From positions 1-64,000 of the IMG/VR virus record IMGVR_UViG_3300041411_000080: 64,000 bases of DNA; one strand, 5' to 3'. A model generated the notes under the pieces. It saw only the letters and a program-made list of their open reading frames with translations. It was not told where the DNA came from and ran no database searches. A program made the position numbers and the translations under genes. Below are positions 58,975-63,942 of this stretch, piece by piece. Every line of letters begins with the position of its first letter. Within the stretch, counting starts at the first letter, position 1.

Positions 58975-59205
58975 TTAGTAAGTCATTCTTTCAACGATGG
59001 CATCGTCGATATGTACAAGTTCACGGGTACGGGAATCTACACGGTTAGCTCGGGGCGCTCGCGGTACGTCTTCACCGGTACGTTTAGAGGGTCCGATATG
59101 CGGTTTATTGCGTACGTCTACGAGATCGATCGCACAACCCTGACCAGTTACTTCAGGTTTGATGTTGTGCTTTCTCGTCCATGCGTCTGGTTCAGCTCTT
59201 CGCAT
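58975..59205 (-). CDS. charged peptide, array B (76 aa)
   Basis: AGGTGA SD; R/D-rich. Confidence 0.75.
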   Translation of the reverse strand: MRRAEPDAWTRKHNIKPEVTGQGCAIDLVDVRNKPHIGPSKRTGEDVPRAPRANRVDSRTRELVHIDDAIVERMTY

Positions 59206-59212
59206 ATGTCAC

Positions 59213-59509
59213 CTAGAGTGATGTACGGAGAAAGGTGGATGCGTGATTGGACATGTCCTTAAATCGTCGGTTCAGATCTCGAGTAAACCCCGCTTGGTCA
59301 TTATGACGAACCTCAGGAACACCCTCCTCGCCCCAACTGTGGCGATCAGCTTCACGCCGAAAGTTGTAGTAGGATTCATCATGTTGCCGCCAGAAGAGGA
59401 TGTCAGAATCACACAACTGTTCAGGATGCATCGGGTCATCCTCCCGAGAGAAGCTGGCGTACTGGCGCTCTCTTTGGTTACGGCCTTCCGATTTTAAGAA
59501 TCGCACCAC
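59213..59509 (-). CDS. charged peptide, array B (about 98 aa)
   Basis: GAGGA SD; R/D/E-rich. Confidence 0.7.
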   Translation of the reverse strand: MVRFLKSEGRNQRERQYASFSREDDPMHPEQLCDSDILFWRQHDESYYNFRREADRHSWGEEGVPEVRHNDQAGFTRDLNRRFKDMSNHASTFLRTSL

Positions 59510-59748
59510 TCATCCTCCCGTTTCTCTATACGTCTATCTAGGGTCTGTTTATCGATATCGAGCCGTTCTTCATCGTCTTCTTCATTAATAGAACGATGAG
59601 CCCAACTTCGGTCAAGTGGTCCGCGAACAACGCCCGGACACCATTCCCACTCAGCCTCCGGTGTTGTGTTTCCGTAACGAACATAATCCAACGTTTCTTC
59701 GTCGTAGGAAAATGGATCGTTAGGGTCATGCATAACGTGTTCGCGCAT
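59494..59748 (-). CDS. charged peptide, array B (84 aa)
   Basis: AAGGTGA SD; D/E/R-rich; WCPGVVRGP. Confidence 0.75.
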   Translation of the reverse strand: MREHVMHDPNDPFSYDEETLDYVRYGNTTPEAEWEWCPGVVRGPLDRSWAHRSINEEDDEERLDIDKQTLDRRIEKREDEWCDS

Positions 59749-59756
59749 AGATCACC

Positions 59757-60026
59757 TTAACAAACTAGTTCTTCATGATCTTGATCAGGTCGGTACATGT
59801 CACCATCGTCACTTGGTGGTTCCACACGTTCTCGAAGTCGATCAGGAACATAGGTGCTGGTACGGTGAACCGGGGCTAGCTTACGCTCACCTATACGCTT
59901 GTCGTTCGTTTGGCTAAACGGAATAGTCGTATCTCGATCAGGACGAGTAACGACTTTACGGTTAACTAGGGATGGTTCACCTTTACGCATTACTTCAGGT
60001 CCTGACTCAAGATCACGATGAACCAT
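59757..60026 (-). CDS. charged peptide, array B (about 89 aa)
   Basis: ORF tiles; R/D/P-rich. Confidence 0.7.
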   Translation of the reverse strand: MVHRDLESGPEVMRKGEPSLVNRKVVTRPDRDTTIPFSQTNDKRIGERKLAPVHRTSTYVPDRLRERVEPPSDDGDMYRPDQDHEELVC

Positions 60027-60586: not shown

Positions 60587-61489
60587 TTAGGAATCGAAAC
60601 CAAATACCATCCGCACTTCACCATACTTCTCGTGAAGACGTTTTACTTCATCGGTGAAGTAAGCGAACTCTTTATTGATTGCAGCATTATCCAGAGTCCA
60701 CTGACAACGAATGTTCAGTTTCTCTACGCGCCCGGCATAACGTCTAAGTTTAGCCAGATGCTTAAGCGCCGATTTCTTACGTTTAACTACACGTTGGCGA
60801 ACGATCTTCTCGACTTTAGGTACATGACGGAAGTTTCCTGGACGATCGAGGATACTCCACGAATCATGTTGGTAGTCTGGATGATCAGGGACCATTTTCT
60901 TAACGTGACGTCGAACCCAGCGGATTTTCTTCTGTGCTTCGTCAACTTCATTCAGAATATGCATGGCATAAGACTGACTACGGATTTTCTCCGGTGTCAA
61001 CTGCGATTGGTCAATAGTAATCTGTTTACCACCCCAGATACCACCACACCAACTTTCAGGTTGAGAGACTTTATCCCACTTGACGTACTGATCCATGGTG
61101 AGAACGCCACGTTTATGGACTGGATTGAAATGCTTGGTACCTTCCAGAATCTCAGTACTGGTCAACCAGCTAAAAGAATGATCGCCGAAACTACCACCGC
61201 ATTTATAATACTCTTCCCAGTCAGGGGCCTTCCAGTCCCAACGAGATTTTGGCTCTTCACGTTTCACAAGGTCCTCAGGTAATCCCCGTGGCTCAGCCAA
61301 AGGTTTGATTGAATCCCCAGTATCAGTACCGCCGAAGCCATAACCGTTACGAACGTTGGCCAACCAACCGAACAAGAAGTAGTGGCGGTTACCTTCGTAT
61401 TTATGATCCGTGATATATTCCCAACTGTCTTCAGCTGGGGTAGACCCCAGTACTTTACGTTGGAACGCTGGATGAACATCAGTACCCAT
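60587..61489 (-). CDS. conserved phage protein (MGxDxH...R.Y.LF..LA.VRN family) with an insertion
   Basis: MGTDVH, RHYFLFGWLANVRN, RGLPED, HSFSWL, RMVFGFDS. Confidence 0.75.
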   Translation of the reverse strand: MGTDVHPAFQRKVLGSTPAEDSWEYITDHKYEGNRHYFLFGWLANVRNGYGFGGTDTGDSIKPLAEPRGLPEDLVKREEPKSRWDWKAPDWEEYYKCGGSFGDHSFSWLTSTEILEGTKHFNPVHKRGVLTMDQYVKWDKVSQPESWCGGIWGGKQITIDQSQLTPEKIRSQSYAMHILNEVDEAQKKIRWVRRHVKKMVPDHPDYQHDSWSILDRPGNFRHVPKVEKIVRQRVVKRKKSALKHLAKLRRYAGRVEKLNIRCQWTLDNAAINKEFAYFTDEVKRLHEKYGEVRMVFGFDS

Positions 61490-61499
61490 GAATTACCCC

Positions 61500-61868
61500 T
61501 TAGTTAATGTGAAGATGTTTTTCGCGAGTTACTTTGGAAGGAACGTGTTTGAATTCCACTTTCAGGAAACGTTCCAACAGTTTGATGGCTTTAGCATCGT
61601 CGACGTAACGCAGGCAATCGCCATTGTATTGCTCAACGGTCAGATTACCCCACAACAGTTCGATGACCGTATGGATACCATCCATAGGACCACTGTAGTT
61701 AAGACTCATGGTCCCTTTAGCCGTAACACCGATCGTAAACCAAGTGTTGTCATTACGCAGGGTCTTATTGACTCGACCAGACTTACTACTGGATTTATTC
61801 TGGTAATACGTACCGATGGTCAACAGACGACGACCGAGTTTGGTCTTTGGATCGATCTTACGCAGCAT
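61500..61868 (-). CDS. basic hypothetical protein (122 aa)
   Basis: AAGGT SD. Confidence 0.75.
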   Translation of the reverse strand: MLRKIDPKTKLGRRLLTIGTYYQNKSSSKSGRVNKTLRNDNTWFTIGVTAKGTMSLNYSGPMDGIHTVIELLWGNLTVEQYNGDCLRYVDDAKAIKLLERFLKVEFKHVPSKVTREKHLHIN

Positions 61869-61869
61869 G

Positions 61870-62301
61870 TTATTTACCTTTTCGTTTTTTGAACTGTTCC
61901 CAGAAACAGATTATGAGTTGGAGCCAGACCACGATAGTGAGGCCGTAAACGAGCAATGGCCCGAAGAACCAATAAAGGTTATCACGCGGTGTTTGCTTTA
62001 TATCGAACTGACGAAGGTTTAAGGTAAGCTTTTCACCCAAGTGCATTTGTCGATACATGTACCCACTTATCTCTCGGTCAAATACGTAACCACTCTCTGT
62101 TTTAAACAGCCCTTCTAATCGTGCTGTACAACTATGCTTACCACAAGCCTGTACCGTATATTTGTCGATGAAAGTAACCGGTACGTCTTGATGTTTCATG
62201 TAGACGTTATTATTCCAAACATAGACCGACCAAGAACTAAGAGTGATGATTAGAAACAATAAGAAAAGACCACTGATATTAAATGTAGATTTACTTGACA
62301 T
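61870..62301 (-). CDS. membrane protein with TMs at both ends (143 aa)
   Basis: two TMs flanking a soluble loop with CGKHSC. Confidence 0.75.
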   Translation of the reverse strand: MSSKSTFNISGLFLLFLIITLSSWSVYVWNNNVYMKHQDVPVTFIDKYTVQACGKHSCTARLEGLFKTESGYVFDREISGYMYRQMHLGEKLTLNLRQFDIKQTPRDNLYWFFGPLLVYGLTIVVWLQLIICFWEQFKKRKGK

Positions 62302-62360: not shown

Positions 62361-62582
62361 CTATTGCTCATCAACTGGACCACGCTTGAATTCCATGTTA
62401 GTCCAGCTGTCATCTTCATCCATTTCAGCTCGACCGTCAACCCAATGACAGTTACGCTGTTCTTCACCTGCACCTAAAGGTCTCCGGGCTTCGGCCTTAC
62501 GAATGGTTGTGATATTGTGTTCGGATAACCTTGGGAACACCCCTCTAGCAAATAGGGTTGGTATGCAGTCACGTTTAAACAT
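62361..62582 (-). CDS. charged peptide, array C (73 aa)
   Basis: AAGGT SD; ends WTNMEFKRGP... Confidence 0.75.
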   Translation of the reverse strand: MFKRDCIPTLFARGVFPRLSEHNITTIRKAEARRPLGAGEEQRNCHWVDGRAEMDEDDSWTNMEFKRGPVDEQ

Positions 62583-62585
62583 TGA

Positions 62586-62795
62586 TCAGACCTTATATAA
62601 CCCACGTTTTATATCTGTGTCCCATATGTACCGATCTATATCCTTCCGGTAGTCATCTGCTCCACAGGTCTCATCATCAAATAACCGCCTACCTTCTAGA
62701 GGTCGGTATTCCGTCACACATCGTTCAAAGATTACATGACGTCTTTGGTCAGAGCTACGGTCATTTAAACCAACCCCCTGATAGTCTCTACTCAT
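62586..62795 (-). CDS. charged peptide, array C (69 aa)
   Basis: GGTGA SD; ends WDTDIKRGL... Confidence 0.75.
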   Translation of the reverse strand: MSRDYQGVGLNDRSSDQRRHVIFERCVTEYRPLEGRRLFDDETCGADDYRKDIDRYIWDTDIKRGLYKV

Positions 62796-62796
62796 A

Positions 62797-63039
62797 TCAC
62801 CACCACTTGTTGTCTATCAAACCCCGTTGAACATCTGTAGCCCAATCTAATTTATTTTGATCTGTACGGACACCGCTAAGATCGTCGCCATCTAACTCAG
62901 TGGTCATCTTTAACCCTTCCGGTTGGATACGTGGATGATCACTCTTACCGCGCTCACCGAACATGCGATAATCCGTTTTCTTATCCTTGATATCCACAGG
63001 TGATGTCGCGCCTGCGGTTTTATCTGAAGTTCTGCCCAT
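62797..63039 (-). CDS. charged peptide, array C (80 aa)
   Basis: ends WATDVQRGL... Confidence 0.75.
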   Translation of the reverse strand: MGRTSDKTAGATSPVDIKDKKTDYRMFGERGKSDHPRIQPEGLKMTTELDGDDLSGVRTDQNKLDWATDVQRGLIDNKWW

Positions 63040-63050
63040 GGGTCGATTAC

Positions 63051-63245
63051 TCAGTAAGTTAAATGTGATGGTCGTTCACAATCAAGTTTTGGATTAGATA
63101 TATCGAAGACAACTGGGCGCCAACTGACATGTTCGGGATTGGAGCGATTACCACTGTCTCTTAAGGATGCTCGTCCACCGACGGTTACATGTCGTCCCGG
63201 CATTAGTCTGGTGTCGAGATAGGTATCTTCTTGCTCTCTACTCAT
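63051..63245 (-). CDS. charged peptide, array C (64 aa)
   Basis: start overlaps the upstream stop; R/D/S-rich. Confidence 0.7.
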   Translation of the reverse strand: MSREQEDTYLDTRLMPGRHVTVGGRASLRDSGNRSNPEHVSWRPVVFDISNPKLDCERPSHLTY

Positions 63246-63421
63246 CGGAAGCGTCTCTCATTAACGTTAGGTTCATCATTGGTTCTAGAAACGTTTGTAT
63301 CTAGATGTACAAACTCACGGTAACCTTCACCCTTACGTTTGAGTCGCTCCGAGGACAATCCTTGTAGGCGATGAATAACCACATTACCGCGTCCATATTC
63401 TGAATTATAATCTAGTTTCAT
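63242..63421 (-). CDS. charged peptide, array C (59 aa, start MKLDY)
   Basis: GAGG SD before ATG 63421. Confidence 0.7.
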   Translation of the reverse strand: MKLDYNSEYGRGNVVIHRLQGLSSERLKRKGEGYREFVHLDTNVSRTNDEPNVNERRFR

Positions 63422-63452
63422 TGTAAACCTCATTTGTTAGTGGCGGCATAAA

Positions 63453-63470
63453 GCTTCCCCGAAGGGAAGC
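63453..63470 (-). terminator. intrinsic terminator, cUUCGg loop
   Basis: GCTTCCC-TTCG-GGGAAGC-TTTAT. Confidence 0.75.
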
Positions 63471-63496
63471 AGTATACCCATTAGATTAGATAAGCC

Positions 63497-63637
63497 TAAT
63501 GAAAGTCGAAGAAGCACGTAGTTAGGTACTGACGTTAGCTCCCGCTAATGTTCTTAACGTACCAGGTCACCTATGGCTGGATCACCCCCTTGAACGCAGT
63601 GCGTATTTGCACGGACTGCTTCTTGACTATACCATTA
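63497..63637 (-). ncRNA. candidate structured non-coding RNA
   Basis: ORF-free gap between two terminators; end-to-end helix UAAUG..AGUCAAGAAGCA / UGCUUCUU-C-GACU..CAUUA enclosing several hairpins; strand inferred. Confidence 0.5.
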
Positions 63638-63705: not shown

Positions 63706-63942
63706 TTATTCTAAGGTGAAGTTTCGGTATAACACAATGTCTTGCTCCAAATCGATAACGGTGTAGTACTTTGCGAACTCGTTATCGATCGGTAAATCGT
63801 AATTGTGATCTACCCATGCTTCCATCTCCTTCTGGGTATTGAAAGAGATCTTAACATAGTGCGTAGGACAGGTACGACCTGGACCCCATGACCGAAGTTT
63901 ATATTCGGCTTCAAACAATGGTTTAACGACTTTATTCTGCAT
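63706..63942 (-). CDS. hypothetical protein (78 aa)
   Basis: AAGGA SD. Confidence 0.75.
   Translation of the reverse strand: MQNKVVKPLFEAEYKLRSWGPGRTCPTHYVKISFNTQKEMEAWVDHNYDLPIDNEFAKYYTVIDLEQDIVLYRNFTLE

What the first reader, a model, noticed from the sequence alone, without database searches (positions are those of the whole stretch)
62361..63039. Shared W-x5/6-RG-[LP] motif near the C-termini of consecutive peptides
Seen: WTNMEFKRGP, WDTDIKRGL and WATDVQRGL in three adjacent ORFs, plus WCPGVVRGP in 59494. The rest of each peptide is divergent. Inference: a conserved recognition or follower sequence with hypervariable cores, the hallmark of multi-precursor peptide systems or a shared docking motif.
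Basis: partly seen in the sequence, partly recalled or inferred. Interest (0 to 1): 0.65.

Follow-up and report, generated by a model that had tools for sequence, protein, structure and literature searches.

The report
Small jumbo-phage paralogues sharing a tail
Two neighbouring tiny genes of an uncultured giant (phiKZ-like) phage are diverged duplicates that keep the same tryptophan…arginine-glycine tail, probably a binding helix; the two other "matches" are unproven look-alikes, and nothing points to a modified-peptide system.

Summary
The four strings are in the sequence at the stated places, on the minus strand of a 320,858-bp metagenomic 201phi2-1/phiKZ-like jumbo phage.

ORFs B (62586-62795) and C (62797-63039) are true tandem paralogues. 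BLASTP between the two types gives E down to 8e-7. About ten orthologue clusters exist, all in related phage contigs. All small ORFs show pN/pS below 1.

The B/C family has two conserved blocks, not one:
- an N-proximal block, D[KR]x[ST]D[YQ]R..F.[EH]RGK[SQ][DE];
- the C-terminal W-x5-R-[GR]-[LI] tail, which lies at the end of the only helix AlphaFold predicts in an otherwise low-confidence protein.

ORF A (62361-62582) keeps its own tail (WT[NS]MEFKRGPVDEQ) in a 64%-identical orthologue, but no unbiased profile test links it to B/C.

F's tryptophan is lost in one orthologue, and the whole motif is missing in another.

A post-hoc extended pattern ([VIF]xRG[LP][IVL]D) hits only A, C and F in all six frames of the genome. 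A common motif therefore stays possible but is not shown.

No peptide-modifying enzymes lie nearby, so the RiPP-like reading is not supported.

Best reading: clade-specific, arginine-rich, probably disordered accessory proteins in a variable gene slot, with the tail as a partner-docking helix.

In passing: a structured, unannotated ncRNA conserved across several jumbo-phage genera lies just upstream.

The parts
62797..63039 (-). ORF C, 80 aa; founding member of the B/C small-protein family
   Evidence: Intact in all strains, with 8 synonymous and 0 non-synonymous differences. 80-aa orthologues at 53-60% identity: P0002, P0006, P0012, P0013, P0014. AF2 pLDDT 57 with a single helix at residues 55-71. 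ESM Atlas model pLDDT 0.33.
62818..62844 (-). Motif WATDVQRGL in C; the conserved tail continues as IDNKWW to the stop
   Evidence: Pairwise identity among C-type orthologues is 0.72 in the tail (residues 66-80) and 0.36-0.42 in the linkers. pN/pS 0.19-0.23. P0006 and P0012 have RR in place of RG.
62935..62985 (-). Second conserved block of C (residues 19-35, DKKTDYRMFGERGKSDH)
   Evidence: Pairwise identity among C-type orthologues is 0.80, and 0.43 between B-type and C-type. pN/pS 0.10-0.21.
62586..62795 (-). ORF B, 69 aa; tandem paralogue of C. Its start codon lies 1 nt after C's stop
   Evidence: BLASTP between B-type and C-type sequences gives E=6e-6 to 8e-7. Orthologues and alleles: P0004 (77%) and P0007. 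Ranks 2nd of 4877 ORFs with a C-only tail profile.
62598..62624 (-). Motif WDTDIKRGL in B
   Evidence: Conserved as W-D-[TL]-[DH]-[IE]-K-R-G-L in P0004 and P0007.
62361..62582 (-). ORF A, 73 aa; adjacent small protein with a similar tail. Homology to B/C is not demonstrable
   Evidence: HMM score -0.3, reached by 1182 of 2000 shuffles. hhalign probability 0.1-0.2%. The 64%-identical orthologue L023:845-1066 keeps WT[NS]MEFKRGPVDEQ. pN/pS 0.40.
62376..62405 (-). Motif WTNMEFKRGP in A (spacing one residue longer)
   Evidence: Chance P=0.003 anywhere in the ORF and 0.0005 near the C-terminus. No substitutions in the last 17 codons in three strain comparisons (L011, L012, L005).
59494..59748 (-). 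ORF F, 84 aa, very acidic; the motif WCPGVVRGP (59617-59643) lies mid-protein
   Evidence: The L004 orthologue has ...WESYPDYLRGPIDCSW, so W is replaced by S. The L016 homologue has no motif. BLASTP of C against F gives E=0.049 over W...V.RG[LP][IL]D..W.
63051..63245 (-). ORF D, 64 aa; small arginine-rich protein, translationally coupled (ATGA overlap with E). No motif
   Evidence: pN/pS 0.11. Orthologues in L016 and L023.
63242..63421 (-). ORF E, most likely 59 aa starting at the second ATG (63421); first gene of the slot. No motif
   Evidence: Orthologues start MK.DYN. GAGG lies 6-9 nt upstream of 63421. Gene callers chose the 59-aa form.
63447..63631 (-). Conserved structured non-coding element (candidate ncRNA) directly upstream of the small-ORF slot. 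It ends in the hairpin at 63453-63470, followed by the invariant TTTATGCCG
   Evidence: No Rfam match. The equivalent 3' end in 201phi2-1 is the validated strong terminator at TTS 229,201 (PMC11512511).

Best explanation
The window is the first 64 kb of an uncultured 201phi2-1/phiKZ-like jumbo phage found in rhizosphere, plant and soil metagenomes.

Directly downstream of a conserved ncRNA-plus-terminator element lies a variable gene slot. In 201phi2-1 this slot holds the unrelated gp305. Here it holds five tightly packed, translationally coupled small genes, in the order E-D-C-B-A.

C and B are tandem paralogues of a clade-restricted family of 69-80-aa proteins. These proteins are arginine-rich, very hydrophilic and probably largely disordered. 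The family keeps two short conserved segments separated by fast-evolving linkers:
- an N-proximal block, D[KR]x[ST]D[YQ]R..F.[EH]RGK[SQ][DE];
- a C-terminal segment, W-x5-R-[GR]-[LI], which in C-type proteins continues as -ID-[ND]-[KR]-WW.

It is shared because of common descent, and it is retained because it is functionally constrained.

Inferred mechanism, not shown: the tail lies at the end of an amphipathic helix that folds on, and docks into, a partner protein of the phage or its host. The linkers are free to vary.

A, and more weakly F, carry a similar W...[VIF]xRG[LP][IVL]D string. They may be very diverged relatives or convergent users of the same partner, but this is unproven. The array is not a RiPP-type precursor set.
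For: **Phage identity and synteny**
-.

**The small ORFs are real genes**
- Intact in nine or more strain contigs, with pN/pS 0-0.40.
- ATGA overlap and 1-3-nt gene spacings, with Shine-Dalgarno-like sequences upstream.

**B and C are homologous**
- BLASTP E=6e-6 and down to 8e-7 across orthologues.
- An exhaustive profile search of 1.84 billion proteins returns only A-, B- and C-type clusters plus compositional hits.
- A further search finds more C-type orthologues.

**Two conserved blocks**
- Pairwise identity among C-type orthologues: 0.80 (block 1), 0.72 (tail), 0.36-0.42 (linkers).
- Between B-type and C-type proteins, the motif is the most conserved segment at 0.52.
- Block-wise pN/pS: 0.10-0.23 in the blocks against 0.44-0.65 in the linkers.

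**Disorder and helix**
- AF2 pLDDT 57 with a single helix at residues 55-71.
- ESM Atlas model pLDDT 0.33.
- GRAVY -0.95 to -1.45 and charged fraction 0.28-0.43, against genome means of -0.23 and 0.22.

**Variable slot content among relatives**
- Window: E-D-C-B-A. L023: E-D-C-A. L016: E-D-B'. L021: E-C-X. L004: C only. 201phi2-1: gp305.
Against: - No partner has been identified and no binding was tested; docking is inference from the conservation pattern and one medium-confidence predicted helix.
- Low pLDDT with a 10-sequence alignment does not prove disorder. The two blocks could pack into a small fold.
- Expression was not shown. The only 'RNA' runs holding the region are metagenomic and probably DNA.
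- The glycine of 'RG' is not invariant: P0006 and P0012 have RR.
- The post-hoc pattern hitting only A, C and F in the whole genome (3 observed, 0.65 expected) suggests the motif may be wider than the B/C family. My main reading treats this as unproven.
Confidence: 0.55

Rival explanations
1. A genuine short linear motif, W-x3-4-[VIF]-x-R-G-[LP]-[IVL]-D, is shared by several otherwise unrelated small disordered proteins of this neighbourhood: A, C/B, F and perhaps the Y-type protein of L025. It would dock them all to one hub, for example a nuclear-shell import factor, a virion-packaging scaffold or a host protein.
For: - The 7-residue core [VIF].RG[LP][IVL]D occurs only three times in all six frames of the 320-kb genome, in A, C and F. 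Shuffles give 0.65 on average.
- All the carriers are arginine-rich, hyper-hydrophilic small ORFs on one strand within 3.3 kb.
- A's tail is fully conserved in a 64%-identical orthologue.
- F's RGP[IL]D..SW is kept in the 55%-identical L004 orthologue.
- BLASTP of C against F gives E=0.049.
- L025's slot protein ends ...YNAQFIRRVIDPSGE, which resembles the tail.
Against: - The pattern was written after seeing the sequences.
- A tail profile built only from C-type or B/C proteins ranks A 219th-1628th and F 65th-710th of 4877 ORFs.
- Whole-protein profile tests are null.
- The spacing differs in A.
- F's motif is mid-protein. Its W is lost in L004 and the whole motif is lost in L016.
Confidence: 0.25
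2. B/C-family proteins are small folded domains. The two conserved blocks pack against each other, possibly as a dimer, and the W...RG[LI] tail is structural core rather than a docking element.
For: - Block 1 is at least as conserved as the tail.
- Invariant W66, R30 and R72 and near-invariant F27, G31 and L74 could form a mini-core with salt bridges.
- The alignment used for folding was shallow, at 10 sequences.
Against: - Very low hydrophobicity (GRAVY about -1.15) and a charged fraction of 0.36-0.42.
- Both AF2 and ESM models are low confidence outside one helix.
- Linker lengths differ between B-type and C-type proteins.
Confidence: 0.15
3. A RiPP-like multi-precursor system: a conserved follower sequence recruits a modifying enzyme to hypervariable cores.
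For: Several short adjacent ORFs have a similar C-terminal string.
Against: - No RiPP enzyme, protease or transporter family was found in roughly 12 kb around the cluster.
- Orthologous 'cores' contain a strongly conserved block and are under purifying selection.
- Relatives carry one to three family members beside varying other genes, with no co-varying enzyme gene.
- The peptides are not Cys/Ser/Thr-patterned.
Confidence: 0.02
4. Pure chance or a compositional artefact: RG-rich small ORFs produce the pattern without any shared ancestry or function.
For: - The ORFs are rich in R and G.
- A and F fail the unbiased profile tests.
Against: - B-C homology is significant and is reproduced across orthologues.
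- The tail is conserved at 53-60% overall identity.
- The per-ORF chance of the pattern is at most 0.005.
Confidence: 0.03

Closest known systems
Tandem arrays of small ORFan accessory genes in variable slots of large phages (for example the host-takeover or early-gene clusters of SPO1, T4 and phiKZ-like phages; from general knowledge)
   Same: - Short, tightly packed, translationally coupled genes with no database annotation.
- Gene content differs between close relatives.
- Duplication and divergence within the slot.
- Mosaic recombination between strains.
   Different: - No function, timing or target is known here.
- The proteins are unusually arginine-rich and hydrophilic.
- The slot sits directly behind a conserved ncRNA and terminator, and may be driven by a TATG late-type promoter. 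That is inference.
T4 internal proteins (IPI, IPII, IPIII, Alt), which share a short capsid-targeting sequence on otherwise unrelated proteins (from general knowledge; not tested here)
   Same: The concept: a short conserved peptide shared by otherwise divergent small phage proteins encoded in a hypervariable locus, serving as a common docking signal.
   Different: - The T4 signal is N-terminal and is removed by the prohead protease. Here the motif is C-terminal and no cleavage site or virion association is known.
- There is no sequence similarity.
- B and C are homologous along their length rather than unrelated.
RiPP precursor arrays (for example prochlorosins or cyanobactins; from general knowledge)
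   Same: Several adjacent short ORFs with one conserved segment.
   Different: - No modifying enzymes nearby.
- Two conserved blocks.
- The cores are not hypervariable.
- The peptides are 69-84 aa and highly charged.
201phi2-1 gp305 and its Viktualia homologue, which occupy the same slot
   Same: Same genomic position, between the conserved ncRNA/terminator and the NrdC.7 (Y05C)-like gene.
   Different: A single 241-aa protein with no similarity to any of E, D, C, B or A, and with no homologue in this genome. The B/C family has no match in 201phi2-1 or Viktualia.

Membership tests
RiPP multi-precursor system | Gene(s) for a peptide-modifying enzyme (YcaO, radical SAM, lanthipeptide synthetase and the like), a protease or an exporter next to the precursors | tested here: not met
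   Pfam and PHROG scans of the neighbours find only Y05C/NrdC.7-like, AAA, QueC-like, PhiKZ_gp244 and an SNF2 helicase, with all other neighbours unannotated.
RiPP multi-precursor system | A conserved recognition (leader or follower) segment combined with hypervariable core peptides | tested here: not met
   There are two conserved blocks. The linkers are variable but under purifying selection (pN/pS 0.44-0.65), and orthologues are collinear along their full length.
B/C small-protein family (defined here) | Statistically significant full-length similarity, including block 1 and the W-x5-R-[GR]-[LI] tail | tested here: met
   For B and C: BLASTP E=6e-6 to 8e-7 and HMM E of 1e-29 or lower. Orthologues: P0002, P0004, P0006, P0007 and P0012-15.
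B/C small-protein family (defined here) | Membership of ORF A and ORF F | tested here: not met
   A: HMM score -0.3, no better than shuffles, and hhalign probability 0.1-0.2%. A and F both rank far down with tail-only profiles. This lowers the claim 'A and F are members'. It does not lower the claim 'A and F use a similar tail'.
Short linear motif / molecular recognition feature in a disordered protein | The motif is more conserved than its flanks, within a region predicted to be disordered | tested here: met
   Tail identity is 0.72 against 0.36-0.42 in the linkers. AF2 and ESM give low confidence except for helix 55-71. Extreme hydrophilicity. Disorder is predicted, not measured.
Short linear motif / molecular recognition feature in a disordered protein | A defined binding partner whose interaction depends on the motif | not testable with these tools
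   No candidate partner is indicated by co-occurrence: C occurs without D, E, B or A in L004. Complex prediction was not run because no specific pair is claimed.
T4-type capsid-targeting sequence | An N-terminal shared peptide ending at a prohead-protease cleavage site, with the protein found in virions | not tested
   The motif here is C-terminal. No proteomic data exist for this uncultured phage.

The most novel reading that the evidence does not exclude
The W...[VIF]xRG[LP][IVL]D tail is a portable docking signal. Several unrelated, disordered, arginine-rich small proteins of this chimallivirus clade (A, B, C, F and others in the slot) would use it to reach one hub, for instance the phage-nucleus import machinery, the virion interior or a host complex. 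That would make it the first linear targeting motif described for nucleus-forming phages.
Probability: 0.15. Interest if true: 0.65.

Novelty: new member of a known kind. Interest (0 to 1): 0.3.

Why it matters
Jumbo phages carry hundreds of small genes of unknown function, and variable slots like this one usually hold host-interaction or counter-defence genes.

This work gives three concrete handles for experiments on cultured relatives such as 201phi2-1-like Pseudomonas phages:
- a small family with two short constrained segments (W66, R72, R30 and block 1);
- a precise set of orthologues;
- a clear separation of what is homologous (B, C) from what only looks alike (A, F).

On present evidence it is an ordinary case of tandem duplication of ORFan genes, not a new kind of peptide system.

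The neighbouring ncRNA may be the more valuable lead. It is conserved across genera, is supported by covariation and has no Rfam family.

Tried and rejected
- **DNA-level repeat or regulatory element as the cause of the motif.** Rejected: the motif codons differ at synonymous sites and no DNA repeat covers them.
- **The small ORFs are fragments of a broken gp305-like gene.** Rejected: no tblastn similarity, and the ORFs are intact and under purifying selection in many strains.
- **Pfam, PHROGs, PDB-sequence and ESM Atlas searches of the small proteins.** Nothing significant.
- **tblastn of C against 50,697 phage genomes, and a B/C profile search of 201phi2-1 and Viktualia.** No relatives.
- **IMG/VR scan with the gp311-like neighbour.** Nothing found.
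- **Long proteins hit by the first profile (P0008-P0011).** They have no motif and no hit with the B/C-only model, so the hits are compositional.
- **The 112-aa gp307 homologue with WQGEDRLRGL (64066-64095, just outside the window).** The string sits in a hydrophobic mid-protein context of a different, conserved family, so it is treated as coincidence.
- **Positive selection on B's N-terminal half.** Rejected: pS is 0.72 there against 0.13 in the C-terminal half, which indicates a recombination breakpoint, and pN/pS is 0.37.
- **Expression evidence from public runs.** The only 'RNA' holders are metagenomic libraries that are probably DNA, and contigs cannot show transcription.
- **Supplementary tables of the 201phi2-1 transcriptome paper.** Not held, so I could not check whether the ncRNA is one of its 11 sRNAs.
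- **AF2 of A.** Low confidence, with only a short helical turn at the motif, so uninformative.
- **Complex prediction.** Deliberately not used, because no specific pair is claimed.

Full report
**What the window is.** The window is bases 1-64000 of a 320,858-bp IMG/VR virus record with direct terminal repeats, rated 100% complete. Its genes lie mostly on the minus strand. The 300-aa protein at 60587-61489 is 47% identical to gp311 of Pseudomonas phage 201phi2-1 and to its homologue in phage Viktualia, and 23% identical to phiKZ gp206. This is therefore an uncultured phiKZ-like (chimallivirus-type) jumbo phage. Near-identical DNA is held by rhizosphere, plant, soil, food and freshwater metagenomes from about a dozen studies.

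**The observation.**
- ORF A: 62361-62582, 73 aa, WTNMEFKRGP.
- ORF B: 62586-62795, 69 aa, WDTDIKRGL.
- ORF C: 62797-63039, 80 aa, WATDVQRGL.
- ORF F: 59494-59748, 84 aa, WCPGVVRGP.

The motif codons differ at synonymous positions and no DNA repeat covers them, so the similarity is at the protein level. W.{5,6}RG[LP] occurs nine times in all six frames of the whole genome, and five of these lie on the minus strand between 59.6 and 64.1 kb. In composition-preserving shuffles, each ORF shows the pattern with P of 0.002-0.005 anywhere and about 0.0005 near the C-terminus.

**Are these real genes?** The ORFs are packed as a translationally coupled string. E and D overlap by ATGA. B starts 1 nt after C's stop, and A starts 3 nt after B's stop. 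Several have Shine-Dalgarno-like sequences upstream. Nine related strain contigs at 92-99% DNA identity, plus more distant contigs, keep every ORF open. Nei-Gojobori counts give pN/pS of 0.00 (C; 8 synonymous, 0 non-synonymous), 0.11 (D), 0.31 (B), 0.32 (E), 0.40 (A) and 0.23 (F). Neighbouring larger genes give 0.05-0.17. They are protein-coding genes under purifying selection, somewhat relaxed in E, B and A.

**Genomic setting.** Reading along the minus strand, the order is as follows.
- A 78-aa gene (63706-63942) with its own terminator.
- A conserved non-coding element of about 185 nt.
- E, D, C, B and A.
- An NrdC.7/Phage_T4_Y05C-like gene (61870-62301), the gp306 homologue.
- gp310-, gp311- and gp312-like genes.
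- A second group of small ORFs (G, F, then a 97-aa and a 76-aa ORF).
- An AAA ATPase and a QueC-like protein.

In 201phi2-1 and Viktualia, the position held here by E-A is taken by a single unrelated 241-aa gene, gp305, which has no homologue in this genome. Slot content differs among relatives.
- L023: E-D-C-A.
- L016: E-D-B'.
- L021: E-C, followed by an unrelated 78-aa gene.
- L025: a different 79-aa gene, followed by C.
- L004: C alone.

It is a variable accessory slot, and C is its most widespread occupant.

**B and C are paralogues with two conserved blocks.** BLASTP of C against the B allele of L005 gives E=6e-6. Across orthologues, B-type against C-type reaches E=8e-7. An exhaustive profile search of 1.84 billion representative proteins found only A-, B- and C-type clusters. 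It also returned four long proteins, but these lack the motif and are compositional hits. A further search raised the family to seven C-type and three B-type sequences, all 55-80 aa and all from phage-like contigs. No longer protein contains the module, which covers the operators' caveat about fusions.

Invariant residues are R30, W66 and R72 (C numbering). Nearly invariant residues are D19, D23, R25, F27, G31, E41, G42, R44, D60 and L74.

Pairwise identity by segment:

| Segment (C numbering) | Among C-type orthologues | B-type vs C-type |
|---|---|---|
| Block 1 (19-35) | 0.80 | 0.43 |
| Tail (66-80) | 0.72 | 0.39 |
| Linkers (1-18, 36-57) | 0.36-0.42 | 0.21-0.31 |

Block-wise pN/pS between C and its L004 and L015 orthologues is 0.10-0.21 for block 1, 0.19-0.23 for the tail and 0.44-0.65 for the linkers.

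It is not the only conserved part. The glycine is also not invariant, because P0006 and P0012 have RR.

**A and F.** A shows no detectable relationship to the B/C profile.
- Its HMM score is -0.3, reached by 1182 of 2000 shuffles.
- hhalign probability is 0.1-0.2%, and only vqRgLi/fkrgpv aligns.
- A tail-only profile built from C-type proteins ranks B 2nd of 4877 ORFs, but A 219th-1628th and F 65th-710th.

Some evidence points the other way.
- A's own tail (WT[NS]MEFKRGPVDEQ) is unchanged in a 64%-identical orthologue and in all strains.
- F's RGP[IL]D..SW survives in the 55%-identical L004 orthologue.
- However, F's W becomes S in L004, and the L016 homologue has no motif.
- An extended pattern that I wrote after seeing the sequences, [VIF].RG[LP][IVL]D, occurs exactly three times in six frames of the genome, in A, C and F. 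Shuffles expect 0.65.
- C against F gives BLASTP E=0.049.

I therefore treat a wider shared motif as an open rival, not as shown.

**Nature of the proteins.** AlphaFold2 with a 10-sequence alignment gives C a mean pLDDT of 57, with a single helix at residues 55-71 (block pLDDT about 74) that runs into the motif. The ESM Atlas model of C has pLDDT 0.33. A is likewise low confidence.

Nine small ORFs of the neighbourhood (E, D, C, B, A, G, F, the 97-aa and the 76-aa ORF) are compositional outliers:

| Measure | Nine small ORFs | 298 ORFs of at least 150 aa |
|---|---|---|
| GRAVY | -0.95 to -1.45 | -0.23 ± 0.26 |
| Charged fraction | 0.28-0.43 | 0.22 ± 0.05 |
| Arginine | 7-16% | 5.6% |

This fits proteins that are largely disordered and carry short recognition segments. 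A small fold cannot be excluded.

**Mechanism.**
- Shown: tandem paralogy, purifying selection concentrated on two short blocks, a variable slot, and no modifying enzymes nearby.
- Inferred: the tail is the end of an amphipathic helix that docks to a partner, and block 1 is a second contact. The proteins are accessory, host- or phage-interaction factors.

The partner is unknown. C occurs without E, D, B or A in L004, so none of these neighbours is an obligate partner. I did not run complex prediction, since no specific pair is claimed.

[quoted passage not shown] That position is the 3' hairpin of the conserved element aligned. Immediately after the hairpin, all six aligned phages share CTTTATG; the four of the 201phi2-1-like group extend this to TTTATGCCG. 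This contains TATG, the phiKZ late-promoter consensus whose G is the start site (PMC4666361). A late-type promoter abutting the terminator, with the G at 63447, could therefore drive E-A. This is a hypothesis only, because TATG is frequent in these genomes.

**Comparison with known systems.** The RiPP reading fails two defining features, namely adjacent enzymes and hypervariable cores. The closest known kind is the ordinary one: tandemly duplicated ORFan accessory genes in a phage hypervariable slot. The idea of a shared short targeting peptide on divergent small phage proteins has a precedent in the T4 internal-protein capsid-targeting sequence (general knowledge). That signal is N-terminal and cleaved, and nothing here tests such a role.

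**Verdict.** The finding is a new, unannotated, clade-restricted small-protein family of a known kind, of modest interest (0.3).

**Limits.** Expression could not be shown. The runs labelled RNA that hold the region are metagenomic and probably DNA, and they are available only as contigs.

Noticed in passing
window 63447-63631 (minus strand); also L004:1800-2020, L001 (201phi2-1 record about 229,016-229,202), L002 (Viktualia), L019 (PhiPA3 record 216,208-216,334), L020 (PA1C): A structured candidate ncRNA of about 185 nt, with no annotation and no Rfam match.
- It is 89.5% identical in L004, where the flanking genes are about 70% identical.
- It is 72-81% identical in 201phi2-1, Viktualia, PhiPA3 and the PA1C/PS119XW group.
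- It lies near the SNF2 helicase gene in every locus examined.
- The consensus fold has 50 pairs, 91% of cells paired (34-40% when the partners are slid), 15 pairs with compensatory double changes, and 0 of 500 shuffles reach the observed values.
- It has an invariant GGGGGTGATCCAGCC core and ends in the hairpin that is the validated strong terminator (TTS 229,201) of 201phi2-1.
- It may or may not be one of the 11 sRNAs in Table S4 of PMC11512511, which is not held.

   Followed up: partly
window 63447-63450 (minus strand), directly 3' of the hairpin at 63453-63470: CTTTATG after the terminator hairpin is invariant in all six aligned phages, and the four of the 201phi2-1-like group extend it to TTTATGCCG. 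It contains the phiKZ late-promoter consensus TATG (PMC4666361). This may be a terminator-abutting promoter for the downstream slot genes (E-A here, gp305 in 201phi2-1)..
   Followed up: partly
window 58975-60026 and 62361-63433 (minus strand): Nine small ORFs in two groups flank the conserved gp306-gp312 block, and all are compositional outliers: GRAVY -0.95 to -1.45, charged fraction 0.28-0.43, arginine 7-16%. The genome's larger ORFs average -0.23, 0.22 and 5.6%. The reason for this concentration of hyper-hydrophilic, arginine-rich small proteins is unexplained.
   Followed up: partly
window 62586-62795 (ORF B) and 63242-63433 (ORF E), compared with L011 and L005: Strain-level mosaicism. 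Between alleles, B's first 33 codons have pS 0.72 and its last 36 codons have pS 0.13, which indicates a recombination breakpoint inside the gene. In L011, E is only 59% identical at the protein level while the adjacent C is 100% identical.
   Followed up: partly
window about 61868-61870 (junction of the Y05C-like and gp310-like genes); L010:7172-7749, L023:1559-2136, L004:2360-2937, L021:3539-4116: A presence/absence polymorphism of a two-gene cassette (65 aa and 126 aa). It is absent in the window but inserted at this junction in some near-identical strains (L010, and run X4's 87.8-kb contig), and it is present in more distant relatives.
   Followed up: no
window 63421-63433: ORF E most likely starts at the second ATG (63421), giving 59 aa. 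Orthologues begin MK.DYN, and GAGG lies 6-9 nt upstream of that ATG.
   Followed up: yes
G000 64006-64329 (just outside the window); L009:4711-5049: The 112-aa gp307 homologue carries WQGEDRLRGL, which is conserved in L015 and L016. The string sits in a hydrophobic, mid-protein context (YLFFWQG...) of an unrelated family and is judged coincidental. In this lineage the gene lies upstream of the ncRNA, whereas in 201phi2-1 it lies downstream.
   Followed up: partly
L002 (Viktualia) 2328-2417, CDS0006: The 29-aa 'hypothetical protein' annotated in Viktualia lies inside the conserved ncRNA element and is probably a spurious call.
   Followed up: no
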